Assembly (NCBI RefSeq): GCF_006345805.1
Contig: NC_043007.1
Span: 19,964,001 to 20,028,000, forward strand
Direction: 5' to 3'
Length of the DNA stretch: 64,000 nt
Source of the DNA: Octopus sinensis
Lineage: Eukaryota
Every line of letters begins with the position of its first letter. The stretch's first letter is position 1. The notes under the pieces are model-generated. The model was given only the letters and a program-made list of their open reading frames with translations. It did no database searches and was not told where the DNA came from. The translations under genes were made by a program, and so were the position numbers. Positions 40,902-61,884 of this stretch are shown here, piece after piece.

Positions 40902-40909
40902 ATTTTGTT

Positions 40910-41178: not shown

Positions 41179-41217
<39 letters not shown>

Positions 41218-41565: not shown

Positions 41566-41624
<59 letters not shown>

Positions 41625-42497: not shown

Positions 42498-42856
42498 AGG
42501 CGCAGGAGTGGCTGTGTGGTAAGTAGCTTGCTTACCAACCACATGGTTCTGGGTTCAGTCCCACTGCATGGAACTTTGGGCAAGTGTCTTCTACTATAGC
42601 CTCAGGCTGACCAAAGCCTTGTGAGTGGATTTGGTAGACAGAAACTGAAAGAAGTCCGTCGTATATATATAGATATATGTTTGTGTGTCTGTGTTTGTCC
42701 CCCCAACATCGCTTGACAACCGATGCTGGTGTGTTTATGTCCCCATAACTTAGCGGTTCAGCAAAAGAGACCGATAGAATAAGTCCTGGGGTTGATTTGC
42801 TCGACTAAAGGCTGTGCTCCAGCATGGCCACAGTCAAATGACTGAAACAAGTAAGA
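42498..42856 (+). mobile_element. SINE family A
   Basis: Full-length. Confidence 0.8.
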
Positions 42857-43283
42857 GAGAGACTTCTTGTAGAGCGGTGAGGGTGGTGGGAGGTTCTACC
42901 TTCCATTTGCAAGGGATCGATGAACTTCACTGCGTAACTGTTCTGACTAAAGAAACCTCAGCATCATTCTGAAGCAAGGTTTTCAAACGTGTAATGTCCA
43001 CTGCCAAAGAGCAACAAGCACTGACCTATGGTAAGTAAAAGGAGGGATAACATGCAGGTGGTGAATCTCCCCTGTAGAAGGGAGAGAGAGAGAGAATGGA
43101 GTGAGAGAGAGAGAGAGAGGGAGGGAGGGAGAGAGAGATGAGGGAGACAGAGAGGGAGAGAGGAGACAGAGAGAGAGAGGAGACAGATAGGAAACAGATT
43201 GAGAGAGAGAACGGAGAGAGAGAGAGGAGAGAGAGAGAATGGAGAGAGAGATAGAAAGACATAGAGAGCAGTAATGTTCTCAC

Positions 43284-43395
43284 CTGATGAGTTGTGTCTG
43301 GCCAAATCACCAATTTTGAAAGATTATTCAGTGGACTCAGTTTGGTGTGCAATTTGTCAGATATGACGAAGAGCATTAGTTCAAGTTCTCTTAAA
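43284..43395 (-). CDS. F-box/LRR gene exon (LRR)
   Basis: cgttttctttcag|T TTA AGA ... CAT CAG|gtgaga; (C)LRELELMLFVISDKLHTKLSPLNNLSKLVIWPDTTHQ; 112 nt. Confidence 0.9.
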
Positions 43396-43689
43396 CTGAA
43401 AGAAAACGAAAAGGGATCCAGTTAAGTATTTGAGTCCCTTCAGCTAAAACCCGACCACAAAACTAGGCCTCCCTTTTTAAAATATGGAACGCAAGTAACC
43501 AATGTACCATTTATAAATAACATGGTCCCACATCGCAAGAATCATAATCACTCATTAAAAACCTTGTTTCAATGACTGAAACAATTATATTATATTTCTT
43601 CATTTCTTCTATCTCTTAATTATGTGTCTGCCTGCAACTAATTTGTTGATATCACGATTATATTAAATAATGACATTCGAGCGAGGTCA

Positions 43690-43965
43690 TTGCCAGTGCC
43701 GCTTGACTGGCTCCTGTGCTGGTGGTACATAAGAAACACCATTTCAGCGTGGCCATTGCCAGCACCGCCTGACTGGCCCTCGTGCTGGTGGCATGTAAAA
43801 GCACCCACTACACTCTCGGAGTGGTTGGCATTAGGAAGGGCATCCAGCTGTAGAAACTCTGCCAGATCAGATTAGAGCCTGGTGCAGCCATCTGGTTCGC
43901 CAGCCCTCAATCAAACCGTTCAACCTATGCTAGCATGGAAAGCGGACGTTAAACGATGATGATGT
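43690..43965 (+). mobile_element. RTE 3' end
   Basis: Family motifs and tail. Confidence 0.75.
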
Positions 43966-44765
43966 TGAATGAGTAATTTTCTTTTTCATTGTATACCAGT
44001 TTAAATTCTGGCCTATGTTTAACTAATATCATATCATCATCATCATCACCCTCCACTTTTCTATGTTTGCATGGGTCTGACGGAATTTGTTGAGGGCAGA
44101 TTTTGGCCAAATGCCATTCCTATCACCAAACCTCACTTGATTTCAGGCAAGCTACTATTCCAAACGGCCAGAAATATTTTTCCCACAGAATACTGGAAAC
44201 AAACAATATTGCTTGTATGACAATGATGCTCATTTACAAATATCATGTGATGTCTGTACATACATACTGGGTACACATAAATACAAGAAGGGCTTCTTTC
44301 AGTTTCCATGATTAAAAAAAAACTAAGAAATTGGTTTTCCCAATCATGTGGTATTGAGTTCACTCTCACTGAATGGCACCCTTGAGGAAGTGTCTTCTGC
44401 TATAACCTCAGAACAACAAAAGCCTTGTGAATGGATTTGGTAGAGGAAACTGAAAGAAGCCATCATATGTGTGTGTGTGTGTACTCTTGTGTTGATTTTA
44501 TGTGATTGAGTAAAAGCAGCATCAACATATAAGCTATGATGTCCAGTTCTCCAATGAAAAACATGTCCAGTTATGGGGAAACATTACCTTACTTGGAAAC
44601 AAGTCTGGGTTGGCAACAGGAAGGGCATCCAGCCATAGAAAATATGCTTCAACAAATTCTGTTCGATGCATGCAAGCATAGAAAAGTGGACATTATGATG
44701 ATGATGATGATAGGGCGGCACTGAATTAATATAATTCTGAATGAAGTACAATAAATGCTACTCAC

Positions 44766-44872
44766 CATTTTAAGTTGCCCAATGCCTTTGCCAAGCTGAC
44801 ATCATTTAAATTACCACCAAGTTCAAGATGAAGCCTTTCGAGATTCACAAGTTTACCTAACTGGAAATATGT
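44766..44872 (-). CDS. F-box/LRR gene exon (LRR)
   Basis: ttcttttttacag|ACA TAT ... AAA TG|gtgagt; TYFQLGKLVNLERLHLELGGNLNDVSLAKALGNLK; 107 nt. Confidence 0.9.
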
Positions 44873-45253
44873 CTGTAAAAAAGAAGTGAATAGAATCCAT
44901 TGAATAGAAGATAAAATTTGATATTTGCAAAAGAGAGAGATTTCATCAGTAAAAAAAACCATCATTGGCCGGGTAGTGATAAGTTAAAATTTGATCTTGA
45001 CCTCTCAGGTATTTGTGTCCATAGATTTATTAAAAGTTGAAATTTTATTAATGCCACAAGTTCAAACCCCAACACTGATTTTATCATGTGACCAATCTGA
45101 TGAGCAAGTACGAGTTGTAAAGTGATTTCAACAACTTGTTAGAAATAGCAGCTAAGTCTCCCTCAAATCACACCTAATCGTTTATAAACAAAAAAAAGTG
45201 CAAAAGCCACATTAAATAGTGTAGGCCTTAAATCAGTGTGTATGAGTGTGTGT

Positions 45254-45294
<41 letters not shown>

Positions 45295-45448
45295 TGTCTC
45301 CTTATTGGTCACGCAGGGCTGAACACAGAAGGGACAAAATACAAAGTAGAGCTTTTGTTTTTGTGAAAAAGAAGAGACGGAAAAAAAAGAAAGAAAAAAA
45401 AAGGTCGAATTCCAAACGAAAGGGATTGTGAAAAAAAAATAGATAGAT

Positions 45449-45611
45449 AGGCGCAGGAGTGGCTGTGTGGTAAGTAGCTTGCTAACCAACCACATGGTTC
45501 CAGGTTCAGTCCCACTGCGTGGCATCTTGGGCAAGTGTCTTCTGCTATAGCCCCGGGCCAACCAATGCCTTCTGAGTGGATTTGGTAGATGGAAACTGAA
45601 AGAAGCCTGTC

Positions 45612-45673
<62 letters not shown>

Positions 45674-45868
45674 TTGTCCCCCTAGCATTTTTTGACAACC
45701 AATACTGGTGTGTTTATGTCCCCGTTACTTAGCGGTTCGGCAAAAGAGACCGATAGAATAAGTATTGGGCTTACAAAGAATAAGTCCCGGGGTTGATTTG
45801 CTCGACTAAAAGGCGGTGCTCCAGCATGGTCGCAGTCAAATAACTGAAACAAGTAAAAGAGTAAAGAG
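45449..45868 (+). mobile_element. SINE family A
   Basis: Full-length. Confidence 0.8.
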
Positions 45869-46077
45869 AGATAGATGATAGACAGACAGACGGATAGATA
45901 GATGTTCTCAACTATCAGAAAGAGTGTTAAGAGAAAACATATTAAACATTTCAAAACTGAAACTGCCTCTGGTTATTATGCAAATCCTTGTATTTTAACA
46001 TGTTTATATTTAAGTTAAAAACTTTATCAGCCTTGGGTTGACTAAAACCTCGTGAGACGGAAAGTGAAGGAAGACTG

Positions 46078-46275
46078 TCATCATCATCATCATCATCATC
46101 ATCGTTTAACGTCCGTTCTCCATACTAGCATGGGTTGGACGGTTCGACCGGGGATCTGGGAAGCCAGAAGGCTGCACCAGGCTCCGGTCTTATCTGGCAA
46201 TGTTTCTACAGCTGGATGCCCTTCCTAACGCCAACCACTCCGTGAGTGTAGTGGGTGCTTTTTACGTGCCACGTG
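46078..46275 (-). mobile_element. RTE 3' end
   Basis: Family motifs and (CAT)n. Confidence 0.75.
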
Positions 46276-46531
46276 TGTGTATTTGTCCCCAACACCATTG
46301 CCTGACAGCCGAGGTTGGTGGACTTACGTGCCCATAACTTAGAGGTTCAGCAAAAGACATCGATAGAATAAGTATTAGGCTTACAAAGAATAAGTCCTGG
46401 GGTTGATTTGTTCAACTAAAGGTGGTGCTCCAGCATGGCCCCAGTCAACTGACTGAAACAAGTAAAAGAATAAAGGAATAAAGATATTTTGGATTAAAGT
46501 TTGGGATCAGTTTTGGTAACGCAATACCTAC

Positions 46532-46636
46532 CTCAGATGTCCAGTTGGTACATTCCCCCAACTCTAATACTTTCAAGCTACGGAGTTCTCCTAAGTAATC
46601 AAAATCGTGATCACTGGCTTTCAAAGATGTAATAGA
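46532..46636 (-). CDS. F-box/LRR gene exon (LRR)
   Basis: tttcctttgcag|TCT ATT ... TCT GAG|gtaggt; SITSLKASDHDFDYLGELRSLKVLELGECTNWTSE; 105 nt. Confidence 0.9.
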
Positions 46637-46659
46637 CTGCAAAGGAAAAAAAAATATAT

Positions 46660-46888
46660 ATTTCTTTACTACCCACAAGGGGCTAAACACAGAGGGGACA
46701 AACAAGGACAGACAAACAGATGTAGTCGATTACATCGACCCCAGTGCGTAACTGGTACTTTATTTATCGACCCCGAAAGGATGAAAGGCAAAGTCGACCT
46801 CGGCGGAATTTGAACTCAGAACGTAACGGCAGACGAAATACGGCTACGCATTTCGCCCAGCGTGCTAACGTTTCTGCCAGCTCGCCTT
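46660..46888 (-). mobile_element. SINE family B within the 383-bp intron
   Basis: Sense to the gene; tail ends about 20 nt before the acceptor at 46637. Confidence 0.8.
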
Positions 46889-47019
46889 ATATATATATAT
46901 ATATATTTCAAAAATGTAAGTACTTGAGTTAATCTGTTCAACTAAAATAAGCCTCAATCTAAATCTATGAAATATAATAAAAAGTTAATATGAAAAAATA
47001 TTTTTAAAAAAATACTTAC

Positions 47020-47164
47020 AAGATGTCGAAGTTGCTTTAATTTAATCAATTCAAAGATCCCAGATGGGAAAGATGCAACTAAACCTCCTGTGCCACGTAG
47101 CTGTAGTTTCTTCAACATTTTTACATTACAAAATTTGGTAAAATCAATCTTGGTTGGTGTTGTC
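47020..47164 (-). CDS. F-box/LRR gene exon (LRR; absent from ORF track)
   Basis: ccatttactag|G ACA ACA ... CAT CTT|gtaagt; (W)TTPTKIDFTKFCNVKMLKKLQLRGTGGLVASFPSGIFELIKLKQLRHL; 145 nt. Confidence 0.9.
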
Positions 47165-47393
47165 CTAGTAAATGGAATGATACCAAAAGAGATTGCTCAA
47201 TAGAATCATGTATTAACTAAATGAATAAAAAATTTCAATATATTACTGTTGTTATGAATGTCATAATAAAATTCTGATATCAAATTCCTATTTTACAGAA
47301 AAATAAAAGGAAACACAGATGCGGAATGGTTGTGAAGACAGCTTAGAAGATTGAGTAAATACTCTAAGAAGACGGAATTATTATTGTAAAATA

Positions 47394-47696
47394 TCTTTAT
47401 ATATAAAAGTGAAGTTGTGTGAGTGTCTGTCTCCTACGATTTAGATTCCTTACTCCCACATTTTGCGGTGCAGTTTAACCAAAAGCGGGTATCTTATAGT
47501 CGTGATTCATATCGAGCCCTTCTGGGTATTAGCGCGCGTCTACGATGAGTCTACGATTTAAAAAAAAATTTACCATCATTTTTCCCCATTTTTAATGCAT
47601 TCTTTTTTTGCTATTATATAAGGGAAGTAACTCTCTAAAAATGCTTATATAGTTATTTCCCTTTCAAACCCAAGCAACGTCAGGCGATACTGCTAG
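47394..47696 (+). mobile_element. Non-autonomous Helitron
   Basis: a|TC ... CTAG|t. Confidence 0.82.
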
Positions 47697-47871
47697 TCTG
47701 ATATACAAGCAGAAAAAAAAAATCCAGCTTTTCTTGAAGTCAATTTTACTGGGTTGAAAAAAACACCAATGACAAATTTAGTTAAAGATTTACTGCGAAA
47801 TATGACTGATGTTAAGTATGGATGGACTTTTGAAATAGCTGACTCAGTATATTTTTTAAAAAACGGTTTAA

Positions 47872-48078
47872 CCCTTTCGTTACTGTATTTATTTTGAGAT
47901 GCTCTGTGTTTCTTTCAATTATTTTACATATAACAAAGAATTTAGTAAAATAACTTAGTTATAATTAAACAAGTATTAAGAACATAAATTGTGGAAGATT
48001 TTAATGCAAAACTTATGAAAACAAGACATTTGTACTACAGAGCCAGAGCCGGTTTTGGCCGGGTTGGTAACGAAAGGG
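47872..48078. mobile_element. piggyBac-type MITE
   Basis: TTAA at 47868-47871 and 48079-48082 flanking CCCTTTCG...CGAAAGGG. Confidence 0.82.
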
Positions 48079-49351
48079 TTAATATTTCACTGATAAAGTT
48101 TGTACAGATATTCTCCAAACCTATGATGTGCCCTTCTTTTTTTTCTTAAACCTTAATTGTTATAACAATGGTAGGAACTCCAACTGAAATAGAGTCTATT
48201 ATAAACAAGTACTTGCGTAATATTGAGTTTTTTATCTAATCTTTTGATCCACACTACACAAGAATATTCCTATGATAATTTTGAATTTTGGTAATTCTAC
48301 AGGTAATTAATGCTTTCATACTGGTTCAAAATATTGGCACAAGGCCAGCAATTTCAGGAGAAGGAGCAAGTCAATTACGTGGACCCCAATGGTTGACTGG
48401 TTCTTATTTTATCAACCCCAAAAGGATCAAAGTCAAAGTCAATTTCAACAGAATTCAAACTCAGAACATAAAGATTGATAAAATGCCATGGAGCATTTTA
48501 TCTGCAATGCTAATGATTCTGCCAGCATGGGGCCTTAATAAATACTTTAATGATGTTATGTTTGCATTCATCTCAACAAAGTATGAATCACTTATCCTGA
48601 TCCTACTTTTAATTGTCTTGCACATATGAACTGTTTTCATCAGTATATTTACATGTAAGTATCTAATTATACAACAGACTACAGGGCCTTGCTAAATGCT
48701 TTCAATATTTCCCTTACACTAAGGCGATGAGCTGGCAAAAACGTTGGCATGCCGGGCGAAATGCTAAGCGGTATTTCGTCTGTCTTTATGTTCTGAGTTC
48801 AAATTCTGCCGAGGTCAACTTTGTCTTTCATCCTTCTGAGGTTGATAAATTAAGTACCAGTTGTGTACAGGGGTTGATCTAATCAACTGGCCCACTCCCG
48901 CAAAATTTTGGGCCTTGTGCCTAGGGCAGAAAAGAATATTTCCTTTACACTTGCTACACCACAAATATAGCATAGATAGGATCATGTGCTAGAATCCAAT
49001 TTATATTAATCTTTTTTTTTTCAAGTAGTTTAATGACCATATTTGGTTAACAAACATCAGAACTCTGCCCGGAGTCACTCATACATTTCAAGCAGTTAAC
49101 GATAATAGTTAGTAAAAGCACATAGGCTAGTGATTAGAGATGCACTCAAGATCATAAGGTTGTGGTTCCAATTCCTGGACTGGGCAGCGCATGGTATCCA
49201 CAAGCAAAACACTTCATTTAGCATTGCTCCAGTTCACACAGAAGTAAATGAATTCCAGCAATAACCAGGAAGTTAACCCTGCAACAGACCCAGTATCCTA
49301 TTCCAGGGGAGTGTTGTAACCTTATACACCACAGAAACTGGGTTAAGCTTC

Positions 49352-49592
49352 GAAGGCGGCGAGCTGGCACAATCGTTAGCACGCCGGGCGAAATGCTTAG
49401 CAGTATTTCGTTTGTCTTTACGTCCTGAGTTCAAATTCCGCCGAGGTCGACTTTGGCTTTCATCCTTTCAGAGTCGATAAATTAAGTACCAGTTACGTAC
49501 TGGGGTCGATGTAATCAACTTAATCCCTTTGTCTGTCCTTGTTTGTCCCCTAATGTTTAGCCCCTTGTGGGCAATAAAGAAGTAGGAAATAG
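49352..49592 (+). mobile_element. SINE family B with 18-bp TSD
   Basis: TSD gaaactgggttaagcttc at 49334-49351 and 49593-49610. Further copies near 36175, 40310, 48330, 48721. Confidence 0.88.
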
Positions 49593-50021
49593 GAAACTGG
49601 GTTAAGCTTCAGTCTTAAGAGTCCTAGGGATCATGAGAGAATTAAGTCCAAGTAACGAAGGCACTGAAGCAGCAGTCCTCATGGATAATGTCTTCCTATC
49701 CCATATAAGCTTATTAATTAAAAGAGTAACCAGTACTTGTCTAAGTTAATTTGATGATCTCGTTAATTAAGAATAACAAGTGTGGCATCCTATCACCTTC
49801 TTCAGTTAAAATGAACAGGAAAAACAAAAGCACAAATACTTTAAGATGTGGATTCAGCTAAAAATCATTAATGGAATAATACAAACTTCAATTTGTCATA
49901 ATGAAATTATTAGTCATATGTAGTATTGTTTCGGGTAATCATGTGACAATACAAGTAAAGCAAAAAGACCGAAAATAGTGAATTAGTGAATTTACAAGAA
50001 ATAGCACAAAATAACATGTAC

Positions 50022-50224
50022 CATTGTTGTTCATTGCTGATATCACTTATTCTTTTAGCAGTCAACTCTTGCAAATTGGGGAGCTTCTCACAGACTGTAT
50101 ACAACATAAGGGCAGGTACTTGATCAAAGTAGATTCGTTTTAGTGTTGTCAGTTGATCTAGAACAGGAGTTAGTTGGTGCCAAATGCGATTCCAATCATC
50201 TCCTAACTTCATTCCTTGTAGATT
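50022..50224 (-). CDS. F-box/LRR gene exon (LRR)
   Basis: atactgttgtag|AAT CTA CAA GGA ATG ... CAA TG|gtacat; NLQGMKLGDDWNRIWHQLTPVLDQLTTLKRIYFDQVPALMLYTVCEKLPNLQELTAKRISDISNEQQ; 203 nt. The donor is weaker, but its phase fits the next exon. Confidence 0.85.
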
Positions 50225-50327
50225 CTACAACAGTATAACAGAAATTTATGATGCCACTTCACATTTCTAAAAGTAAGACAATGTTCTTAAAAGAAACACA
50301 AAACAATATTTAAAGTATCTTATTTTC

Positions 50328-50890
50328 ATCATCATCATCATCATCATCATTTAACGTCCGCTTTCCATGCTAGCATGGGTTGGATGATTTGACTGAGGGC
50401 TGGCGAACCAGATGGCTGCACCAGGCTCCAATCTTGATCTGGAAGAGTTTCTACAGCTGGATGCCCTTCCTTACGCCAACAACTCTGAGAGTGTAGTGGG
50501 TGCTTTTACGTTCCACCGGCACGGGGGCCCAGTCAGGCGGTACTGGCAATAACCTCGTTCAAATGTTTTTACACGTGCCAGTAAGGCGACGCTGGTAACG
50601 ATCATGCTTGAATGGTGTCTTTTACATGCCACCTGCACAGAAGCCAGTTAGCTGCTCTGGCAATGATCACGCTCGTATGGTGCTCTTTGCACCCTGCTAG
50701 CACGGGGCACAAGTGCCAGTAAGGCGACGCTGGTAACGATCACACTGGAATGGTGCCTTTTATGTGCCACTGGCATGGAAGCAGGTTAGCCGCTCTGTCA
50801 ACGATCACACTCGTATGGTGCTCTTTGCACCCCACAAGCACGGATGCCAGTCATCGAATTTGATTTCGATTTCACTTGCCTCAACAGGTC
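50328..50890 (-). mobile_element. RTE 3' end with internal tandem units
   Basis: Extends to gaagacctgttgaggcaagtga, shared with the RTE 3' UTR at about 14525. Confidence 0.75.
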
Positions 50891-51144
50891 TTCCCTTTCG
50901 TTACAATACTTCTGTTGAAATTCACAGCATTGGTTTAAATTAATTTTGAAAAATGAAGAATCATTCAAATATATGTCATAATTAAGCTGATGTTTCAAAC
51001 ATAAATCATGAGGAAATTTTGATAGACTTTTTTAATTTAGATTACTTTAAAACAGGGAATTTGTATGACAGAACTAGGGGCAGTCTCCGGTGGGTTAGTA
51101 TCAAAAAGGTTAGATATAAACTAGGAGTAAGTTTTGACACTTAC

Positions 51145-51231
51145 TAATTCTTCAACAGTATGTTTGTTAAAATATTTTGTGGCCAAAGTCCAATTAGAAA
51201 TTCTTGTATTATTCAAGTGAATGGCTTTCCA
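51145..51231 (-). CDS. F-box/LRR gene exon (end of F-box; absent from ORF track)
   Basis: ctttttatttcag|TGG AAA GCC ... GAA TTA|gtaagt; WKAIHLNNTRISNWTLATKYFNKHTVEEL; 87 nt. Confidence 0.9.
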
Positions 51232-51573
51232 CTGAAATAAAAAGAATAAGAATCAGCAATGCGAGGATACATGTGAATGAGAGCATGCATATATATGCAT
51301 ATGACAAAAATAGCAAATCATGGTAGCCGCAAATTTCAAGAGAAGGCCATTAGGATAAACATCAAAGTGCAGGAAAATATTAGACATTAAGAAATTAAGT
51401 AATGATTGTTATTTCTAGTTTAGGAAAACAAAACATTGTTCCTTGCAATATTACCATCATCATTTTAACGTCCACTTTTACATGTTTGCCAAAGAGGCAT
51501 ATTTTCTATGGATGGATACCCTTGCTGACACCAACCTTCATGTTTCCATGCAAGGTGATATTTCCCCAGGACA

Positions 51574-51871
51574 TCTTATATATAAAAGAGAGGTTGTGTG
51601 TCTGTCTCCTACGTTTTAGATTCCTAACTACTCCCACATTTTGCGGTGCAGTGTAACCAAAAGCGGGTATCTTATAGTCATGATTCATATCGAGCCCTTC
51701 TGGGTATTAGCGCGTGTCTACGATGAGTCTACAATTTAAAAAAAAATTTACCATCATTTTTTTTCCACTTTAATGCATTTTTTCGCTATTATATAAGGGA
51801 AGTAACTCTCTAAAAATGCTTATATAGTTATTTCCCTTACAAACCCAAGCAACGCTGGGCGATATTGCTAG
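51574..51871 (+). mobile_element. Non-autonomous Helitron
   Basis: a|TC ... CTAG|t. Confidence 0.82.
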
Positions 51872-52832
51872 TTGGAAATAAATGACTCCGCTTGCATGAC
51901 AGTGATACTCATTTACAGCTATCATGTAGTGTCAAGACCAGAAGGCACAAACACGCTCACTCTCTCTCTCTTGCTCTCTCTCGCACACACACACACACTG
52001 GGCTGCTTTCAGCTTCCATCTTCCAATCACGAGGCTTTGGTTGGCCCAAAGCTACAGAAGACATTTGCATAAAGAGCCATACAGTGGGAATGAACCAGAA
52101 CCCTTCTGGTTGAGAAGCAAACTTCGAAACTACACAGCCACAACTGTGCCTATCTACATCATCACCATCATCATCATTTAACATCCATTTCCCATGCTGG
52201 CATGGGTTGAACGGTCTGACAGGAGCTGGTAAGGGCTGAGAGCTGCACCAGGCTCCATTGTTTAGTTTGGCATAGTTTATATTCTTTTATCTGCTTCAGT
52301 CAATTTGACTGCAGCCATGCTGGAGTAACGCCTTTAGTTGAACATATTGACCCCAGGACTTATTCTTAATAAGCCTGGTACTTATTCTCTTGGTCTCCTT
52401 TTGTTACAGGGACATAAACACACCAACATTAGTTGTCAAGCAATGGTGGGGGAACAAATAGACACACAAACAGACACACATATATATATATATATATATA
52501 TATGATGGACTTCCTTCAGTTTCCGTTTACCAAATCCACTCACAGGCTTCCGTCAGCCTGAGGCTATAGTAGAAGACACTAGCCAAAGGTACCATGCAGT
52601 GGTTGGTAAGCAAGCTACTTACCACACAGCCACTCCTGTGCCTATAAATATTATATATATATATAAATATGCATGTATGTGTGTGTGTGTGTATGTGTGA
52701 AGGTGCTAGCTTAAATTAGAATATGGTGCATTACATTATAAATATCAACTCCATATACTAAATTAGTACTTTAATAAACAATTTATTTCAAAATATACAG
52801 TTATGTACGAATGAATAACTTATTATACTTAC

Positions 52833-52884
52833 CAGAGAAGGCTGAGTCGCAAGTTGGTGCCATGATTTACAAACCAATGAGCAT
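52833..52884 (-). CDS. F-box exon, minimal form (could extend to 53577 via upstream repeated acceptors)
   Basis: ctttccaacag|A TGC TCA TTG GTT TGT AAA TCA TGG CAC CAA CTT GCG ACT CAG CCT TCT CTG|gtaagt; (R)CSLVCKSWHQLATQPSL; 52 nt. Confidence 0.85.
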
Positions 52885-53636
52885 CTGTTGGAAAGAGTAA
52901 GAAAATAAAGGCTATTTAAATCAAGGAAACTAGATCCAATAACATTTGCAAGTTGGTGCCATGATTTACAAACCAATGAGCATCTGTTGGAAAGAGTAAG
53001 AAAATAAAGACTATTTAAATCAAGGAAACTAGATCCAATAACATTTGCAAGTTGGTGCCATGATTTACAAACCAATGAGCATCTGTTGGAAAGAGGAAAA
53101 AAATAAAGACTATTTAAATCAAGGAAACTAGATCCAATAACATTTGCAAGTTGGTGCCATGATTTACAAACCAATGAGCATCTGTTGGAAAGAGTAAGAA
53201 AATAAAGACTATTTAAATCAAGGAAACTAGATCCAATAACATTTGCAAGTTGGTGCCATGATTTACAAACCAATGAGCATCTGTTGGAAAGAGGAAAAAA
53301 ATAAAGACTATTTAAATCAAGGAAACTAGATCCAATAACATTTGCAAGTTGGTGCCATGATTTACAAACCAATGAGCATCTGTTGGAAAGAGTAAGAAAA
53401 TAAAGACTATTTAAATCAAGGAAACTAGATCCAATAACATTTGCAAGTTGGTGCCATGATTTACAAACCAATGAGCATCTGTTGGAAAGAGGAAGAAAAT
53501 AAAGACTATTTAAATCAAGGAAACTAGATCCAATAACATTTGCAAGTTGGTGCCATGATTTACAAACCAATGAGCATCTGTTGGAAAGAGGCAAAAAAAT
53601 AAAGACTATTTAAATCAAGGAAACTAGATCCAATAA
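52846..53636 (-). repeat. Tandem array, 8 x 99 bp, of 3' splice site + partial F-box exon
   Basis: Motif gcatctgttggaaagag recurs at 52881, 52980, 53079, 53178, 53277, 53376, 53475, 53574. The array is open in frame (ORF 52788..53594). Units differ by a few substitutions. Confidence 0.97.
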
Positions 53637-53982
53637 TACAGTTCTGTATTTAAGAGATGAGGAATTATGTACATTATTTACATTCGATGGATATTTGTCC
53701 TCATCTTGTTTGTTGTTAACGCAACGTTAACCACTACTCCATATGCCTGTAGGCATATGGCATAGTGGTTAAGAGCACGGGCTACTAACTCCAAGATTCC
53801 AAGTTCGATTCCAAGCAGTGACCTGAACAATAATAATAATAACATTGAAAAATACCTTAGGAATGAGAACCCAGGTATGAAATTTTCCCAAGACACCTGA
53901 TGAAGGCTGGAGAGTACATCAGCTGAAGCGTGTTAGCAACAAACAAGATGAGGACAAATATCCCTCAAATGTAAATAATGTT
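53637..53982 (+). mobile_element. Second copy of the tRNA-head/hammerhead element, with 10-bp TSD
   Basis: TSD gatccaataa at 53627-53636 and 53983-53992. Inverted tail fragment, then tRNA-like head (tagtggttaag ... aagttcgattcc), then a degenerate hammerhead at 53892-53934 (GAAA->GAAG). Confidence 0.75.
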
Positions 53983-54023
53983 GATCCAATAACATTTGCA
54001 TAACCTTAGAAAAAACATCAAAA

Positions 54024-54092
<69 letters not shown>

Positions 54093-54321
54093 TTTTACTT
54101 GTTTCAGTCAGTTGACTGCGGCCATGCTGGAGCACTGCATTTACTCAAGCAAATCGACCCTAGGGCATATTCTTTGGTAAGTCTAGTACTTATTCTATCA
54201 GTCTCTTTTGTCGAACCGCTAAGTTACGGACATGTAAACACACCAGCAACGGGTGTCAAGCAATGTTGGAGGTATAAACAGAGACACACAAACATATACA
54301 CACACATATATATTTATATAT

Positions 54322-54562
54322 CTGTAATATAATATGTGACAATTATTCAGTTGCCATAACAAGACTCCAAGTTTCGGATATCGGGGCGGAAACCTGCTCC
54401 GTCACCTCTTCAGTTATCGAGGCAATCAAAATATGCTATTTTATATGCTACATTTTGACTGCCTCGATAACTGAGGAGATGCTTGAGCAGGTTTCCGTCC
54501 TGACATCCGAAACTCGGAATCTTATTAAGGCAACCAAAATATTGTCACATATTATATTACAG
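54322..54562. mobile_element. 241-bp foldback with complete hammerhead motifs on both strands
   Basis: Termini ctgtaatataatatgtgacaat / attgtcacatattatattacag. Hammerheads at 54358-54418 (-) and 54466-54526 (+). Confidence 0.7.
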
Positions 54563-54900
54563 GCGTAGGAGTGGCTGTGTGGTAAGTAGCTTGCTAACCA
54601 ACCACATGGTGCCGGGTTCAGTCCCACTGCGTGGCATCTTGGGCAAGTGTCTTCTGCTATAGCCCCGGGCCGACCAATGCTTTGTGAGTGGATTTGGTAG
54701 ACGGAAACTGGAAGAAGCCCATCATATAGGCGCAGGAGTGGCTGTGTGGTAAGTAGCTTGCTAACCAACCACATGGTTCCGGGTTCAGTCCCACTGCGTG
54801 GCATCTTGGGCAAGTGTCTTCTGCTATAGCCCCAGGCCGACCAATGCTTTGTGAGTGGATTTGGTAGACGGAAACTGAAAGAAGCCTGTCGTATATATGT
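54563..54900 (+). mobile_element. Two tandem 5' halves of SINE family A
   Basis: Heads at 54563 and 54729. Confidence 0.78.
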
Positions 54901-54943
54901 ATATATATATATATTATATATATATATATATATATATTATATA

Positions 54944-55340
54944 ATTAGGGCTTAGTAAAATAAATTACTTTGCCACATACTGAATTTGCTAGAAATAGCA
55001 GCCAAAAAAGTTTTTTTGCCATTTCCACTACTTAAAGAAAATTTTTCTCAAGGGTATGTTCTTTCTTTTTAGTGCTTCCAAATCCAAAATAAGAAATGTT
55101 TAGCTGACGAAAGAAATGCTGAGTTTATTTGGCTAATCTAGAAACGTTAACGTTCTCAAATAATCTTTGTACTTGTGATATTTTTCTGTTTTTACCTCCA
55201 TACCTTCGTGAGTTATTTTGAGTAAACATTATCTGAGAGAAATTTTCTTTAAGTAGTGGAAATGGCAAAAAAACTTTTTTGGCTGCTATTTCTAGCAAAT
55301 TCAGTATGTGGCAAAGTAATTTATTTTACTAAGCCCTAAT
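54944..55340. mobile_element. MITE with about 115-bp TIRs, TA flanks
   Basis: attagggcttagtaaaataaattactttgcc... / ...ggcaaagtaatttattttactaagccctaat. Confidence 0.78.
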
Positions 55341-55439
55341 TATATAATGTAATATTTTGAATTCGCCTTAAATGGTCCTTTTACATACTGAATACTTGGT
55401 GAAATTGATTAATAACTAATTAATTTTACCCTCAATTGT

Positions 55440-55494
<55 letters not shown>

Positions 55495-55964
55495 TGTGTG
55501 TCTGTGTTTGTCCCCCTAGCATTGCTTGACAACTGATGCTGTTGTGTTCACGTCCCCATCACTTAGCGGTTCGGCAAAAAGAGACCGATAGAATAAGTAC
55601 TGGGCTTACAAAAAGAATAAGTCCCGGGGTTGAGTTGCTCGACTAAAGGCGGTGCTCCAGCATAGCCGCAGTCAAATGACTGAAAAGAGTAAAAGAGTAC
55701 AGCTAAATTCCTCTATTTACATAATATCAAGGTCTCTTTGATTCCTTTGTTGTCTTACTATTACTATTAATCTCTATATATACGACAGGCTTCTTTCAGT
55801 TTCCATGTACTAAATCCACTGACAAAGCTTTGGTTGACCTGAGTCTAGAGTAGAAGACATTTGCTCAGGGTACCATGCAGTGGGACTGAACCCAGAACCA
55901 TGTGGTTGGTAAGCAAGCTACTTACCACACAGCTACTCCTGCACATATATATATAAAACACCAT

Positions 55965-56187
55965 TTGAGTGTGGTCGTCACCAGTACCGCCTGACTGGCC
56001 CTTGTGCCGGTGGCACATAAAAGCACCCACTACACTCTCGGAGTGGTTGGCATTAGGAAGGGCATCCAGCTGTAGAAACTCTTCCAGATCAGATTGGAGG
56101 CTGAAGCAGCCACTTGGCTCGCCAGTCCTCAGTCAAACTGTCCAACCCATGCCAGCTTGGAAAGCGGATGTTAAACGATGATGATAT
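55965..56187 (+). mobile_element. RTE 3' end
   Basis: Family motifs and tail. Confidence 0.7.
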
Positions 56188-56419
56188 ATTGATAGATAGA
56201 TAGATAGATAGATAGAGAGGTAGCTTCTATTTATAGCACATTGCTATCATCAAAATGCTAAATCATCATCGTTTAATATTCACTTTTCCGTGCTGGATGG
56301 ATTGGATGGAATTTTGTTGAGGCAAATTTTCTGCAGCTGGATGCCCTTCCTGTTGCTAACCCTCTCCCGTTCCCATGTAAAGTAATATTATCCAATGATC
56401 AGACAGAGGATTTGGGATA

Positions 56420-56795
56420 AGGCGGCAAGCTGGCTGAAATGTTAGCACGCTGGGCGAAATGCTTAGCGGTATTTCGTTTGCCGCTATGTTCTGAGTTCAA
56501 ATTCCACCAGGGCCGACTTTGCCTTTCATCCTTTCGGGGTCGATAAATTCAGTACCAGTTATGCACTGGGGTCGATATAATTGACTCAATCCGTTTGTAC
56601 TCTCTGTGTTTAGTCCCTTGCGGGCAGTAAAGAAATAGGTATTTCGTCTGTCTTTACGTTCTGAGTTCAAATTCCGCCGGGGTCAATTAAATAAGTACCA
56701 GTTATGCACTGGGGTCAATATAATCGACTTAGTCCGTTTGTCTGTCCGTGTTTGTCCCCTCTGTGTGTAGCCCCTTGTGGGCAGTAAAGAAATAA
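56420..56795 (+). mobile_element. SINE family B dimer
   Basis: Junction aagaaataggtatttcgtc at about 56630. Confidence 0.78.
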
Positions 56796-56872
56796 GATTT
56801 GGGAATGAAGGACACCACTTACATGACAGGGACATTCGTTTACAACTATTTTCTGATGTGAAGGCAAGGAGT

Positions 56873-56907
<35 letters not shown>

Positions 56908-57302
56908 CAGGCTTCTTTCAGTTACAGGAATATAAAGATTTATGACAAATCTTTTAAAACCACTCTAAAAGTAAAGAAAAGATTGCATTCTTTTTTTATT
57001 TTTAATTTTATTTAATTTTATTTTACATGTATTTTAAAAAGAAAAAATCTCTGGATTTTTATGGTTTGAACACCCGGCATTTAGGATCTGGCAATTCATT
57101 ATACACCAGTCAAGTTGGACAATGCAATAGATATGATTTATACCATTCAGAATATGGTAATAAAATGGAATGGATAGCATTAGTTCTTGCGTATCATGGG
57201 CATCTACAAATTTTTGTTTCTTTGGAGATTTTAGCTATGCATATAATATGTAGTTGTGTGTGTGTGTTTGTGTATATGTATATGTGTGTGTATATATATA
57301 TT

Positions 57303-57582
57303 GCTCAGCCTCGCCTGGCCCCCGTGCCGGTGGCACATAAAAAGCACCATCCAATTGTGGCCGTTTGCCAGACTCGTCTGGCACCTGTGCCGGTGGCACG
57401 TAAAAAGCACCCACTACACTCACGGAGTGGTTGGCGTTAGGAAGGGCATCCAGCCGTAGAAACATTGCCAGATCAGACTGGGCCTGCTGCAGCCTTCTGG
57501 CTTCCCAGACCCCAATTGAACCGTCCAACCCATGCTAGCATGGAAAGCGGACGCTAAACGATGATGATGATGATGATGATTA
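57303..57582 (+). mobile_element. RTE 3' end
   Basis: Family motifs and tail. Confidence 0.75.
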
Positions 57583-57589
57583 TATATAT

Positions 57590-58110
57590 ATAGCAATAAG
57601 AAAATAGAGGGGATCAATAGGTGGTTCATCAACTTTTAGACATTATATTATGTTAACTTATTTATTTATTTACTAAACTGACAATTACAATAATATACAT
57701 ACATATACAAATTATTCTTTACATATAAGATATAAGATAAAAAATATATTAATATATAAGGATACCAGTAATTATTACAAAATAACATACGTGAATATAA
57801 ATTGGGAAAATAGCTTACAGCTGTTTCAACCAAGAGGTAAAAATACCTCATTCTACCTTTATTACTCAAGTAGACTGAGGTATTTTTACCTCTTGGCCGA
57901 AACAGCTGTAAGATATTTTCCCAATTTATATTCATGTTTGTTATTTTATACTAATTACTGGTATCAATATATATTAATATATTTTATATTTTATTTGTAA
58001 AGCATTATATGTTATACATGTATGTATATTATTGTAATTGTCAGATTATATAATGTCTAAAAGTTGATGAACCACCTATTGATCCCCTCCATTTTCTTAT
58101 TGCTATATAA
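57590..58110. mobile_element. AT-rich foldback (about 250-bp arms) with aataagaaaat(g/a)gag termini and GAAACAGCTGTA motifs at the inner ends
   Basis: Left and right arms are reverse complements around spacer 57851-57875. The same terminus appears at 8200-8220, 24480-24505, 27966-28162 and 58320. Confidence 0.7.
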
Positions 58111-58844
58111 ATTAATGGTAAAATATCTCTTTACCTTCACCCATTGAGTACACTAGGTAATGTAATTGCAATGCAATAAAAATGCTTTGGTGTATTAATA
58201 ATTGGGTATTCTACCAACAGTATATTGGATAGATATTATCCCTTAGTTGGTTGGATTCACAACCTCTAACTTTCTTGGAGTTATATATCTATCTATCTCT
58301 CTATATATATATATATTACAAATAAGAAAATGGAGAAACACATTAGTTGGTTTATCAGCTTTAGGATATTAGAATGTTGACTTATTTATTTATCAAAACG
58401 ACAACCATAACATACATATATACAGTATAAAATTCAATACATATAAGATAAGAATACTAGTAGTTATTAAAAAAAAACATTAATATAAATTGTTAAAATC
58501 ATTAAAATCACTTACAGCTGTTTCAGCCTATGGAAAAAAGTAATTTGTTGTGCCTATACATGTCAATTGTATTGAGGTTGTAGCCAGTTGTGCTTGTTTT
58601 TGTCACATATATAAAAACAATTTCCCATTAAACTGAAGAATTACTCAATACGTTTTAGTAGAGAACATGTTTATTAAACTTCTACAAGAAGTGGGTGAAT
58701 AGTGACTTCAAAGTTTTGGCTTGTTAGTCTTCTTCGTCCCTCTTCTCTCACACATGCACACACACACACACACACACACACAACTGTTTCAAGAAAATGT
58801 CTCGAGTTTAAAACATTTCAGAGTAAATTTATTCAGAAACTCAC

Positions 58845-60082
58845 CTGGCAAGATCTCCTGCACTTAAATAGTGAAATATCTGCAGCATACTAGAGTAGCC
58901 AGAATATAATTTTTTGAAAGGACACAGGTAGTTGTTAAATTTGCTTCGGCACTTTTGAACTTTGCTGATTGTTTTTACAGATTCCAAGGTTTTACTTTTA
59001 TCTACAGCTGGATTGCTTTCACTTGCTTTGTTCTTCTCCAAGAGAGACACAGAGTAATCTTTGGTACTATCACCAGACACAGTACCCGATGAAAAGGTTA
59101 TATTCATTGTGGTTGTGGAGCCACTGGGTACCGAAAATGTCTTGGGTGGCAGAAAAACCTTTAATCCTTCAGGTGTGTTTATGCAACGGGATGGGGGGAT
59201 AAAGAGCTGCATGTTATTGATGCGTAATGCAAGAGGAAGAGAGGAATCTAAACGCTTTGCTACTGCTAATGGTAATGTAAGAAGCTGGCCCGAGCGTGGG
59301 TAATTGTCTTTGCCAGCATCACCATCCCTAACATTACTAGAACTACTTGGAGATGAAGCTGGAACTTCCAGTTTAATATTGGCTGATGATAGATTAGGTT
59401 GTGAGTGAGTGGAAGTGAGAGATTTAGATGAAGCATTTACAGGACAATCAGATGGTGGTGATGATGATGATGAGGTAGTATCATTCAAGTCTTTTGGGGT
59501 TTGGATGAGTGTATTGAAAGAAGCACTTGTAGAGGGAGTGTTTGTGACTGTGAAAGTGTTGGGTGCTGTAGTTTCTGAAATACTGCTGGTGTCTTTCAGC
59601 ATTGAAGAAGGAACTGAATGAGGTAAAGGTGGCGAAGAGTGAGACAGAGTCTTTGATGCGTTTAATGAGTTATTAGATTTGTTTGATTTCAAACGAGGAC
59701 TTACGGACGCTTGCAATGTATTGAGTGAAGCTTGGATTTGAGATTTGCAATCTGGGATGTCTGAAGAGGACTGCAAGTCTTTTATATGATAGGATTGTGA
59801 GGGATCAGGTGATAAGGAATCGGTGGATTTTACAATGTTCATGACAACGTATCTAGGGGATCCATTCGAAGCACTTTTTAACAGCTGAGAATCAGATTTG
59901 GATGCTTGAGATAAAAAGTTTGTATCTTTAGAAAGCTGAATCACAGATGGCATGGTAGATTTTCTTCCCTTTTCATTATTCCATGAAGAATGATGCGTCT
60001 TGACTGTTCTATTACCAGACAAACTATTAGATGCAGTGGTTTCAACTGGGGGAATCCAATCACCAAGATCCATTTCACAGTT
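58845..60082 (-). CDS. Large exon: end of PHD, Ser/Thr/Pro-rich linker, start of F-box
   Basis: gactaatttcag|AAC TGT GAA ATG GAT ... CTT GCC AG|gtgagt; 1238 nt; contains ORF 58841..60073. NC completes the last CxxC of the PHD; ends YSSMLQIFHYLSAGDLA(R). Confidence 0.93.
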
Positions 60083-60174
60083 CTGAAATTAGTCAAATTA
60101 GAGGTAATAATTAATCTAATCATCTAACAAAGAGTATAATTCAAAGTCAATTTAGTTTTAAGAAAAATAAAAAC

Positions 60175-60584
60175 AGGCGCAGGAGTGGCTGTGTGGTAAG
60201 TAGCTTGCTAACCAACCACATGGTTCCGGGTTCAGTCCCACTGCGTGGCACCTTGGGCAAGCGTCTTCTACTATAGCCCTGGGCCGACCAATGCCTTGTG
60301 AGTGGATTTGGTAGATGGAAACTGAAAGAAGCCTGTCATATATATGTTATATATATGTGTATATGTATGTGTGTGCATATGTTTGTGTGTCTGTGTTGTC
60401 CCCCTAGCATTGCTTGACAACCGATGTTGGTGTGTTTACGTCCCCATCACTTAGCGGTTCGGCAAAAGAGACCGATAGAATAAGTACTGGGCTTACAAAG
60501 GATAAGTCCCGGGGTCAATTTGCTCGACTAAAGGTGGTGCTCCAGCATGGCCACAGTCAAATGACTGAAACAAGTAAAAGAGAG
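60175..60584 (+). mobile_element. SINE family A
   Basis: Full-length, about 90 bp from the acceptor of the large exon. Confidence 0.8.
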
Positions 60585-60784
60585 AAATCTGTAAATGGGA
60601 AGAAGGGAAGATTTGTCTGTCTTGTGTATCGCATGACACAAACGACTTACTTGCCCGGTGTCAATGTATCATCTGATAAACATTGCTATTTTTTTTTTAA
60701 ATCCCACAGTAATTTGGGACTTGTGTAAGGAAAACTTTATATTACCCAGAAAGTATAAAACATGCATGCACATATGTATATGGC

Positions 60785-61615
60785 AGCTGACTTGGCAGAC
60801 ACCCGTAAAATTATCAACCATCTTACTAACAATAACTCTGAGCACCTTTTCAAACTCCACCTGTCTAACACCTGTGGACATGTTTACAAAGTCAGAAAAC
60901 AGCACAGCTCCCATGACTTTCGGAAACATTTTTTCACGCTAAGAGTTGCTGAAGCATGGAACAAACTGCTAGCATCAGTTGTTAGTTGTCAGAGCACTGC
61001 ATCCTTCAAAACTTCCATGCTTCCTGTGATTCGCCAACACTACACCTGATCTTCTCCCCTCCATACACACGCAAGCATGTATCTGACTCATACACTGTTC
61101 ACTTCCCAGACATTTGTACATTACTATATATGCTTTATACACACTTTTGACAAGTTGTGGTGCACCTGAGCACTGTATACAATAATTTCATTATTATTAT
61201 TATTATCATTATTATACATACATAGATACATCCTTCAAAAGTCGGAGCACTGCATCCTTCAAAAGTAGGAGCACTGCATCCTTCAAAACTTCCATGCTTC
61301 CTGAGATTCGCCAACACTACACCTGATCTTCTCCCCTCCATACACACGCGAATATGTATCTGACTCATACACTGTTCACTTTCCAGACATTTGTACATTA
61401 CTGCATATGCTTTATATGCACTTTTGACAAGTTGTGGTGCACCTGAGCACTGTATACAATAATTTCATTATATATTATATATATCTTGACTCATACACTG
61501 TTCACTTTCTTGACTTTTGTACGTAATTCTATGTTCTGTACATGAACCTTTGATGAGTTGTAGTGCACCTGAGCACTAGACACAATAATTTCATTATTAT
61601 TATTATTATTATTAT
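60785..61615 (+). mobile_element. Three consecutive CR1 3' ends
   Basis: HFFTLRVAEAWNKL then three 3' UTRs, each ending gagcactgtatacaataatttcatt or a close variant (about 61190, 61470, 61595). Confidence 0.8.
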
Positions 61616-61721
61616 TATAAGGATTAACTAAATGTCTGAAAACCAGACATTTAGGACAAACTTATGTTTTCAACTGGCAAAAGGTTAATACTAAGATTGG
61701 TATAATGTTAAAAGTGCTTAC

Positions 61722-61884
61722 TTTGCATTTGAAATTTTGAGGAACCTCATCTTCTTTCAGGTTTACACATGAATTATGAAATAGACACATGCATATATCA
61801 CAATGCAGTTGAGGAGGAATGCCTGTAAGGCCTGGACAGTTGAGGGAACAGGGTTGGAAAGAATTTCTTTTGTTCATATTAACT
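61722..61884 (-). CDS. PHD-finger exon (most 5' exon found in window)
   Basis: tatttattgcag|A GTT AAT ATG ... TGC AAA|gtaagc; VNMNKRNSFQPCSLNCPGLTGIPPQLHCDICMCLFHNSCVNLKEDEVPQNFKCK; 163 nt. Confidence 0.9.

What the first reader, a model, noticed from the sequence alone, without database searches (positions are those of the whole stretch)
52833..53636. Eight in-frame tandem splice acceptors: a 33-aa ladder inside the F-box
Seen: each 99-bp unit holds a pyrimidine tract, CAG, and codons for (R)CSLVCKSWHQLA, but only the last unit has the donor. Because 99 is a multiple of 3 and there are no stops, acceptors at 52884, 52983, 53082, 53181, 53280, 53379, 53478 or 53577 all give in-frame exons (52 to 745 nt), adding 0-7 copies of CSLVCKSWHQLANVIGSSFLDLNSLYF(L/F)(T/P)LSNR. 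Unit variants alternate (LT, FP, LT, FP), suggesting 198-bp higher-order amplification and a real array. The unit junction sits on a TGC microhomology. Known: the F-box binds Skp1. Inference: acceptor choice or array length could tune or break SCF assembly, and the most upstream acceptor may be the default.
Basis: partly seen in the sequence, partly recalled or inferred. Interest (0 to 1): 0.8.

Follow-up and report, generated by a model that had tools for sequence, protein, structure and literature searches.

The report
Tandem splice-acceptor repeat in octopus F-box gene
In the Octopus sinensis genome a 99-base piece spanning the end of an intron and the start of a small F-box-coding exon is repeated eight times head to tail, giving eight in-frame splice acceptors, but two related octopus species have one copy and every annotated protein uses only the last acceptor, so it is most likely a lineage-specific minisatellite with little or no effect on the protein.

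Summary
On the minus strand, 52849-53641 holds eight 99-nt units. Each unit is 63 nt of intron 3' end (branch-point candidates, pyrimidine tract, CAG) plus the first 36 nt of a 52-nt exon. Only the last unit continues into the rest of the exon and the GTAAGT donor. All eight acceptors are in frame and stop-free.

The gene is Octopus sinensis XP_029642448.1, misnamed "serine-rich adhesin for platelets". It is really an MBD, PHD-like, F-box and LRR protein conserved in molluscs and a brachiopod. The exon encodes the second half of the F-box.

The 99-mer occurs nowhere else in the 2.7-Gb genome. O. vulgaris and O. bimaculoides each have one unit. Both RefSeq isoforms, and every homologue examined, have an uninterrupted F-box that corresponds to the acceptor at 52884. 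The idea that the most upstream acceptor is the default is therefore not supported. An isoform ladder is possible in sequence terms but has no evidence, and no RNA data could be reached.

The array is unlikely to be an assembly artefact. The units differ only in the pyrimidine tract and form a stepwise series, from O. bimaculoides-like (proximal unit) to O. vulgaris-like (distal unit). Internal junctions also keep the empty site of a transposon that sits in the distal unit. This suggests the first duplication predates the sinensis/vulgaris split.

The parts
52849..53641 (-). Array of eight 99-nt units (u8 proximal = 52849-52947 ... u2 = 53443-53541; u1 distal = 53542-53641, 100 nt). Each unit is 63 nt of intron 3' end plus 36 nt of exon 5' end.
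   Evidence: TRF period 99, 7.9 copies, 98% matches; exact 99-nt spacing; unit alignment A1; the 99-mer is found only here in the 2.72-Gb genome
52833..52884 (-). Canonical 52-nt exon, (R)CSLVCKSWHQLATQPSL, the second half of the F-box. Acceptor CAG| lies before 52884 and the donor |GTAAGT begins at 52832.
   Evidence: Sequence; tblastn of XP_029642448.1 residues 1758-1775, 100%; used in all four annotated octopus proteins
52983..53577 (-). Seven extra in-frame acceptors. The first exon base would be 52983, 53082, 53181, 53280, 53379, 53478 or 53577. Each has its own pyrimidine tract and branch-point candidates: TTGAT at -37, TTTAT at -22, and CTTAC at -14 in u3/u5/u7 only.
   Evidence: no annotated or collected protein uses them
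53637..53982 (.). 346-bp dispersed transposon (50-nt terminal inverted repeats 53671-53720 / 53932-53981) inserted in the distal unit.
   Evidence: Inverted repeats; at least 125 matches genome-wide, full-length copies 81-87% identical; same insertion, 346/346 identical, in O. vulgaris; absent from O. bimaculoides
53627..53636 (.). Target-site duplication GATCCAATAA, proximal copy.
53983..54000 (.). Second target-site copy plus CATTTGCA. This is the 5' end of the distal unit and the ancestral intron sequence that supplies the TGC microhomology.
   Evidence: The 18-mer GATCCAATAACATTTGCA is identical to the seven internal junctions
58845..60082 (-). Upstream exon. It ends ...MLQIFHYLSAGDLA + AG (first half of the F-box), followed by the donor AG|gtgagt.
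51145..51231 (-). Next exon downstream (WKAIHLNNTRISNWTLATKYFNKHTVEE). It supplies the conserved W that ends the F-box.
   Evidence: tblastn, 100%
39859..61884 (-). The part of the gene inside the window: PHD-like exon 61722-61884, then the F-box and LRR exons (50022-50224, 47020-47164, 46532-46636, 44764-44873, 43284-43394, last exon 39859-40181). The MBD exon and a 1124-codon first exon lie beyond 64000.

Best explanation
This is a 99-bp minisatellite specific to the Octopus sinensis assembly. It arose by microhomology-mediated tandem duplication (TGC at both breakpoints) of a segment that happens to span an intron/exon boundary. The copied segment carries a complete 3' splice-site module plus the first 36 nt of the 52-nt exon that encodes the second half of the F-box of an MBD/PHD-like/F-box/LRR protein. 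Later unequal exchange expanded the array, partly in 198-bp steps. The mature mRNA is made with the acceptor nearest the only donor (52884), which gives the conserved, uninterrupted F-box. The seven upstream copies are then intronic decoys that are spliced out with the 6-kb intron. At most they yield minor in-frame +33n-aa isoforms, which would uncouple the F-box from the LRR domain. What is shown: the array, its uniqueness in the genome, its absence from two other species, and the annotated protein. What is inferred: which acceptor is used, and why.
For: - The array and its anatomy are established.
- The 99-mer is unique in the genome.
- O. vulgaris, in an independent ONT-based assembly (PMC10700109), has one unit. 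O. bimaculoides also has one unit.
- TGC microhomology lies at the breakpoints.
- Both O. sinensis RefSeq isoforms read through the 52884 acceptor. X2 differs from X1 only at its C-terminal end, downstream of this exon.
- No protein in the 15-billion-protein collection carries the insert.
- Nine homologues, from cephalopods to a brachiopod, keep fixed spacing between W..LA and ..LW.
- The flanking introns are long: about 6.0 kb upstream and 1.6 kb downstream (coordinates). In that architecture, splice sites closest across the exon are favoured (PMC9225289).
Against: - No RNA-seq or Iso-Seq junction counts could be reached. The RefSeq model could rest partly on homology.
- The eight acceptors are identical from -12 to +36. 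The upstream units have equal or more uniform pyrimidine tracts, so nothing in the sequence disables them.
- In human data, equally strong 3' sites more than 20 nt apart tend to favour the upstream site. That bias is only reduced, not clearly reversed, with long introns (PMC9225289).
- Exons of 151 and 250 nt (acceptors u7 and u6) are of normal size.
- Copy number in a long-read assembly polished with short reads may be inexact.
Confidence: 0.62

Rival explanations
1. One reading: acceptor choice among the eight sites, or array length, produces a ladder of in-frame isoforms with 0-7 extra 33-aa blocks inside the F-box. This would tune or abolish Skp1 binding or SCF geometry.
For: - All eight sites are sequence-competent, in frame and stop-free.
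- The upstream pyrimidine tracts are not weaker.
- Upstream 3' sites are often preferred when strengths are equal (PMC9225289).
- The array seems to have persisted for a long time.
Against: - No annotated isoform or collected protein carries an insert.
- The family never has an insertion at this point.
- O. vulgaris and O. bimaculoides do without the array.
- Being in frame and open in one frame is not improbable. My rough estimate is about 1 in 10 by chance, from the unit length and three out-of-frame stops.
Confidence: 0.15
2. The most upstream acceptor (53577) is the default, giving a 745-nt exon.
For: It is transcribed first, and human data show a general bias toward the upstream 3' site.
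Against: - RefSeq X1 and X2 use 52884.
- A 745-nt internal exon full of pyrimidine tracts and branch sites, between long introns, is poorly suited to exon definition (established knowledge; PMC9225289).
- The product would carry 231 extra residues inside a domain that is invariant in length across phyla.
Confidence: 0.05
3. Assembly artefact: the array, or most of its copies, does not exist in the animal.
For: - The reference is a long-read plus Hi-C assembly with 20,491 contigs (PMC10700109), and tandem-repeat copy number can be misassembled.
- No second haplotig or independent O. sinensis data could be checked (one search found only this locus).
- The sister species has one unit.
Against: - The novel junction TGC|AAATG is present seven times.
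- There are five distinct unit types. Their variant bases are exactly the O. bimaculoides or O. vulgaris states and form a homoplasy-free series. An assembler would not invent that.
- The junction preserves the empty transposon site seen in O. bimaculoides.
Confidence: 0.05
4. A recent duplication inside O. sinensis from an O. vulgaris-like single unit. The first copy would have included the transposon, which was then lost between its target-site repeats or skipped by a second template switch.
For: - O. vulgaris, which split about 2.5 Mya (PMC10700109), has one unit with the transposon.
- The units are identical outside the pyrimidine tract.
- The transposon and the distal unit are identical between the two species.
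Against: The proximal unit would need four changes back to exactly the O. bimaculoides states (columns 37, 47, 49, 51 of A1). It also needs an extra precise-excision step.
Confidence: 0.13

Closest known systems
[quoted passage not shown]
   Same: A short tandem duplication spans an exon/intron boundary, so the spliceosome sees duplicated, identical splice sites.
   Different: Those cases are single duplications of a donor, or of a donor/acceptor pair, and their splicing was tested in minigenes. Here an acceptor module is present eight times, in frame, in a wild reference genome, and its splicing has not been tested.
Intronic VNTRs that modulate splicing, e.g. ABCA7 (PMC5954066), TERT VNTR6-1 (PMC11830802) and the human spl-TR catalogue (PMC10078293). 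These were seen only in the search listing and were not read.
   Same: A minisatellite lies next to a splice site, and its copy number could affect splicing.
   Different: Those repeats lie wholly within introns and act as regulatory sequence. Here each unit is itself a full 3' splice site plus coding sequence.
Tandem alternative acceptors (NAGNAG and other alternative 3' splice sites)
   Same: Competing in-frame acceptors would add or remove residues.
   Different: NAGNAG sites are 3 nt apart and are chosen at the second catalytic step. Here the sites are 99 nt apart, each with its own branch site and pyrimidine tract, so the choice would be made at initial recognition (PMC9225289).
FBXL-type SCF substrate receptors (SKP2, FBXL5, FBXL3) and KDM2A/B
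   Same: An F-box is followed by leucine-rich repeats. The best solved-structure matches are FBXL5 and SKP2. The PHD-like, F-box, LRR order recalls KDM2 and, from my memory, FBXL19.
   Different: This protein has an MBD (methyl-CpG-binding) domain, and Pfam reports neither CXXC nor JmjC. No vertebrate member was seen among the hits examined, and Skp1 binding is untested.

Membership tests
F-box domain (Pfam PF12937 / PF00646) | Profile match above the curated cut-off | tested here: met
   F-box-like 52.1 bits against a cut-off of 24.3, and F-box 34.6 against 20.5, residues 1744-1781 of XP_029642448.1. The repeated exon part matches profile positions 23-40.
F-box domain (Pfam PF12937 / PF00646) | Binds Skp1 | not testable with these tools
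   Only sequence similarity to Skp1-bound SKP2 and FBXL5 chains is available.
FBXL (F-box plus LRR) substrate receptors | Leucine-rich repeats directly after the F-box | tested here: inconclusive
   LRR_14 scores 39.3 bits, just under the cut-off of 40. The SKP2 alignment runs through the LRR region at E = 1e-4.
KDM2 / FBXL19 family | CXXC zinc finger (and JmjC in KDM2) upstream of PHD, F-box and LRR | tested here: not met
   Pfam reports MBD, F-box and LRR only, with no CXXC or JmjC. The PHD match is weak, E about 0.006-0.009 and below cut-off.
Minisatellite / VNTR | Head-to-tail array of 10-100-bp units | tested here: met
   Period 99, 7.9 copies, 98% matches.
Minisatellite / VNTR | Copy number varies between individuals | not testable with these tools
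   Only a between-species comparison was possible: 8 units in O. sinensis, 1 in O. vulgaris and 1 in O. bimaculoides.
Alternative 3' splice sites | Each site has a branch-point candidate, a pyrimidine tract and AG | tested here: met
   yUnAy motifs lie at -37 and -22 (and at -14 in four units). Pyrimidine fraction is 0.82-0.86 over -25..-4, and all eight sites have CAG.
Alternative 3' splice sites | More than one site is used in transcripts | not testable with these tools
   No RNA data were available. The annotated proteins show only the 52884 site, and protein searches for the insert were empty.
Microhomology-mediated tandem duplication | Short identical sequence at both breakpoints and a clean head-to-tail junction | tested here: met
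   TGC precedes both breakpoints: intron ..TTATGC|AAATG and exon ..ACTTGC|GACTC. Seven identical junctions are present.

The most novel reading that the evidence does not exclude
The array is a long-lived, copy-number-variable cassette of fully competent splice acceptors. Its use inserts 33-aa blocks between helix 3 of the F-box and the conserved LW. A heritable repeat length would then set the ratio of active to uncoupled forms of a methyl-CpG-binding SCF receptor. The confinement of all unit variation to the pyrimidine tract would then reflect selection on acceptor strength.
Probability: 0.08. Interest if true: 0.75.

Novelty: new member of a known kind. Interest (0 to 1): 0.4.

Why it matters
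Eight identical, complete 3' splice sites sit 99 nt apart in front of a single donor, all in frame and therefore not subject to nonsense-mediated decay. This would be a clean natural test of how the spliceosome chooses among equal acceptors in a long-intron animal: exon definition, first-transcribed-first-used, or proximity across the intron. One set of junction counts would answer it. The locus also shows how a microhomology duplication across an exon boundary can persist and expand without breaking a conserved domain. The host gene, mislabelled as an adhesin, belongs to an uncharacterised family that pairs a methyl-CpG-binding domain with an F-box/LRR receptor. If the upstream sites are silent, as seems most likely, the feature is a curiosity of repeat evolution with no functional consequence.

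Tried and rejected
- **Protein searches for the insert.** I searched the 5.8-billion-cluster protein collection with the 273-aa array frame and with an 88-aa two-unit piece. The aim was to find transcripts or other individuals carrying the junction. Neither search found anything. This leaves isoform use and polymorphism untested; it does not disprove them.
- **Exact look-up of the O. vulgaris protein CAI9730641.1.** This gave no locus. The longer isoform CAI9730640.1 did.
- **KDM2/FBXL19 identity.** I first suspected this from the PHD-like exon, then rejected it because Pfam finds an MBD and no CXXC or JmjC.
- **The 99-mer as a dispersed satellite.** Rejected, because it occurs only at this locus.
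- **Transposon-insertion order.** I first read the transposon as proof that the duplication simply preceded a private O. sinensis insertion. The insertion is in fact shared with O. vulgaris, which forces the more complex history given in the full report.
- **A transcription error of mine.** I miscopied the bases just upstream of the transposon and thought they differed between the species. The alignment shows they do not.
- **Literature search for acceptor-junction duplications with tested splicing.** One query found nothing and two were malformed.
- **Structure prediction of insert-bearing isoforms.** Not attempted. A spliced hypothetical protein is not an admissible input, and the array frame alone lacks the first half of the F-box.

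Full report
**What is there**

The window is G000 contig 11, 19,964,001-20,028,000, from a 2,719,151,902-base genome in 13,516 scaffolds. These figures match the Octopus sinensis assembly GCA_006345805.1 as tabulated in PMC10700109. The protein encoded here is XP_029642448.1 of O. sinensis, on a record of the same length as contig 11.

Tandem Repeats Finder reports a 99-bp array at 52849-53636: 7.9 copies, 98% matches, no indels. Read on the minus strand, each unit has two parts. The first is 63 nt of intron 3' end (AAATGTTATTGGATCTAGTTTCCTTGATTTAAATAGTCTTTATTTTCTTACTCTTTCCAACAG). The second is 36 nt of exon (ATGCTCATTGGTTTGTAAATCATGGCACCAACTTGC).

The acceptor string occurs eight times at exactly 99-nt spacing. 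The first exon base falls at 52884 + 99n, up to 53577. Only the last unit runs on into GACTCAGCCTTCTCTG|gtaagt.

The reading frame set by the upstream donor (58845, AG|gtgagt) is open through the whole array (273 codons). The other two frames of the unit contain stops. Pfam matches positions 23-40 of the F-box-like profile eight times. The junction 18-mer occurs 8 times against 0.01 expected. The 99-mer occurs nowhere else in the genome. Every factual statement in the finding is therefore correct.

**The gene**

A HMMER scan of 1.84 billion representative proteins with the upstream exon found a 2135-aa protein, 100% identical over that exon. Its 90% cluster has four members:
- O. sinensis XP_029642448.1 (X1, 2135 aa)
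- O. sinensis XP_036363066.1 (X2, 1993 aa)
- O. vulgaris CAI9730641.1
- O. vulgaris CAI9730640.1

All four are named "serine-rich adhesin for platelets", a label that probably reflects only the long serine-rich exon.

Pfam finds an MBD domain (residues 1099-1171), an F-box (1744-1781) and leucine-rich repeats just under cut-off. A weak PHD-like finger lies in the exon at 61722-61884. The best solved-structure matches are FBXL5 and SKP2.

Homologues with the same layout are "uncharacterized" or "MBD domain-containing" proteins. They come from oysters, scallops, clams, a gastropod and the brachiopod Lingula. tblastn places the exons in the window. The repeated exon encodes residues 1758-1775. 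The following exon (51145-51231) starts with the conserved W.

**Which acceptor is used**

All four annotated octopus proteins read ...FHYLSAGDLAR-CSLVCKSWHQLATQPSL-WKAIHL..., which corresponds to the acceptor at 52884. X2 differs from X1 only at its C-terminal end, after residue 1992. Two searches of the protein collection with the array frame found no protein carrying HQLA-NVIGSS. Nine homologues from four animal classes keep the same spacing between W..LA and ..LW.

By alignment to SKP2, the insert would fall between YRLA and SDESLW, at the end of the F-box just before the link to the repeats.

The flanking introns are long, about 6.0 kb and 1.6 kb. In that architecture the splice sites closest across the exon tend to pair (PMC9225289). 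The same paper shows that for 3' sites of equal strength more than 20 nt apart, the general preference is for the upstream site. With long introns that preference is only reduced.

The upstream units are not weaker in sequence. They are identical from -12 to +36, and their pyrimidine tracts are equal or more uniform. My conclusion that 52884 is the main site therefore rests on the annotation and on conservation. It does not rest on a sequence argument. Minor use of the sites giving 151-nt and 250-nt exons cannot be excluded. No RNA reads were reachable.

**Comparison with other species**

*O. vulgaris.* The orthologous locus (GCA_951406725.2, assembled from ONT reads) has one unit and no 99-bp array.

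*O. bimaculoides.* This species also has one unit.

*The transposon.* In O. sinensis a 346-bp dispersed transposon lies in the most distal unit, flanked by a 10-bp target-site duplication. It has 50-nt terminal inverted repeats and at least 125 matches in the genome. The same insertion, 346/346 identical, is present in O. vulgaris. O. bimaculoides has the empty site. The seven internal unit junctions of O. sinensis carry the empty-site sequence TGC-AAATG-TTATTGGATC-TAG.

*Variation among units.* In the alignment of all units with the two single-copy species (A1), every variable column lies in the pyrimidine tract. The states form a series without homoplasy:
- O. bimaculoides
- u8 (C37, C47, T49, A51)
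- u7, u5 and u3 (T37)
- u2 (C51)
- u6 and u4 (T47)
- O. vulgaris and u1 (G49)

The proximal unit therefore keeps the outgroup states, and the distal unit equals the O. vulgaris copy.

*Inference.* Two independent features point the same way: the empty-site junction and the pyrimidine-tract states. Both suggest that the first duplication happened before the transposon inserted, and so before O. sinensis and O. vulgaris split. That split is put at about 2.5 Mya, and the split from O. bimaculoides at about 34 Mya (PMC10700109). The O. vulgaris reference haplotype would then have collapsed to one unit that keeps the distal 5' part.

I give this history about 0.55. About 0.3 goes to recombination between an array-bearing empty-site allele and a transposon-bearing single-unit allele. 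About 0.15 goes to a recent duplication with loss of the transposon copy. In all three scenarios the variant pattern is hard to reconcile with an assembly artefact, although the exact copy number remains unverified.

**Unexplained points**

1. All variation among the units lies within about 15 nt of pyrimidine tract, and none in the other 84 columns.
2. A stretch of about 717 bp shows at most one mismatch between O. sinensis and O. vulgaris. It covers 54164-53542 plus 52848-52755: the transposon, the distal unit, the exon and 80-odd nt of the next intron. Windows of 700 bp across the gene average 10.8 mismatches, and only two windows, both in the large coding exon, have one or fewer. If the units were as old as the species split, some differences outside the pyrimidine tract would be expected. 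Recent re-expansion (the 198-bp alternation of u3-u7) or homogenisation must therefore be invoked.

**Verdict**

The feature is best filed as a minisatellite born from a junction-spanning, microhomology-mediated duplication. That makes it a new member of a known kind: junction duplications (PMC9052919, PMC3265369) and splice-adjacent VNTRs (PMC5954066, PMC11830802). Its main value is as a natural test of acceptor choice, and one set of junction counts would settle it.

Noticed in passing
window 39859-64000 (-) and about 12.4 kb beyond the window's high end (G000:C11 up to about 20,040,430; loci L009-L010): The host gene is annotated 'serine-rich adhesin for platelets' but encodes an MBD, a weak PHD-like finger, an F-box and leucine-rich repeats. 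Homologues with the same order are unnamed proteins of bivalves, a gastropod and Lingula. Among the hits examined no vertebrate member was seen. A methyl-CpG-binding F-box receptor appears to be uncharacterised.
   Followed up: partly
window 53637-53982 (target-site copies at 53627-53636 and 53983-53992): A 346-bp transposon with 50-nt terminal inverted repeats and a 10-bp target-site duplication. It belongs to a large dispersed family (other copies 81-87% identical). The insertion is shared with O. vulgaris, base for base, and is absent from O. bimaculoides.
   Followed up: yes
window 54164-53542 and 52848-52755, against L019 34827-35538: About 717 bp around the transposon, distal unit and exon show at most one mismatch between O. 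sinensis and O. vulgaris. Flanks within a few hundred bases differ by 3-12%, and 700-bp windows across the gene average 10.8 mismatches. No explanation was established; constraint, a recent exchange and chance all remain open.
   Followed up: partly
window 52886-52912 and the same offset in each unit (alignment A1 columns 37-52): All differences among the eight units lie in the pyrimidine tract. They form a stepwise series from the O. bimaculoides state (proximal unit) to the O. vulgaris state (distal unit). The A at -14, which gives a CTTAC branch-point-like motif, is present only in units 3, 5, 7 and 8.
   Followed up: partly
L019 35611-36420, against window about 52663-52683: O. vulgaris has about 800 bp of extra sequence in the intron just downstream of the exon that O. 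sinensis lacks. This is probably another insertion difference.
   Followed up: no
window 52865-52870 and every 99 nt upstream: Each unit's exon part contains a donor-like TTT|GTAAAT. It is weak by consensus (no G at -1 or +5) and is also present in the single-copy species.
   Followed up: no
window 44764-44873 (-), protein residue 1992: RefSeq isoform X2 (XP_036363066.1, 1993 aa) matches X1 up to residue 1992 and then ends. It therefore lacks the last LRRs and the C-terminal tail.
   Followed up: no
window 54561-54886 and 50571-50843: Two-copy tandem repeats of 167 bp (97% matches) and 138 bp (85%), made of SINE-like sequence that recurs throughout the window. Local tandem duplication seems frequent in these introns.
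   Followed up: no
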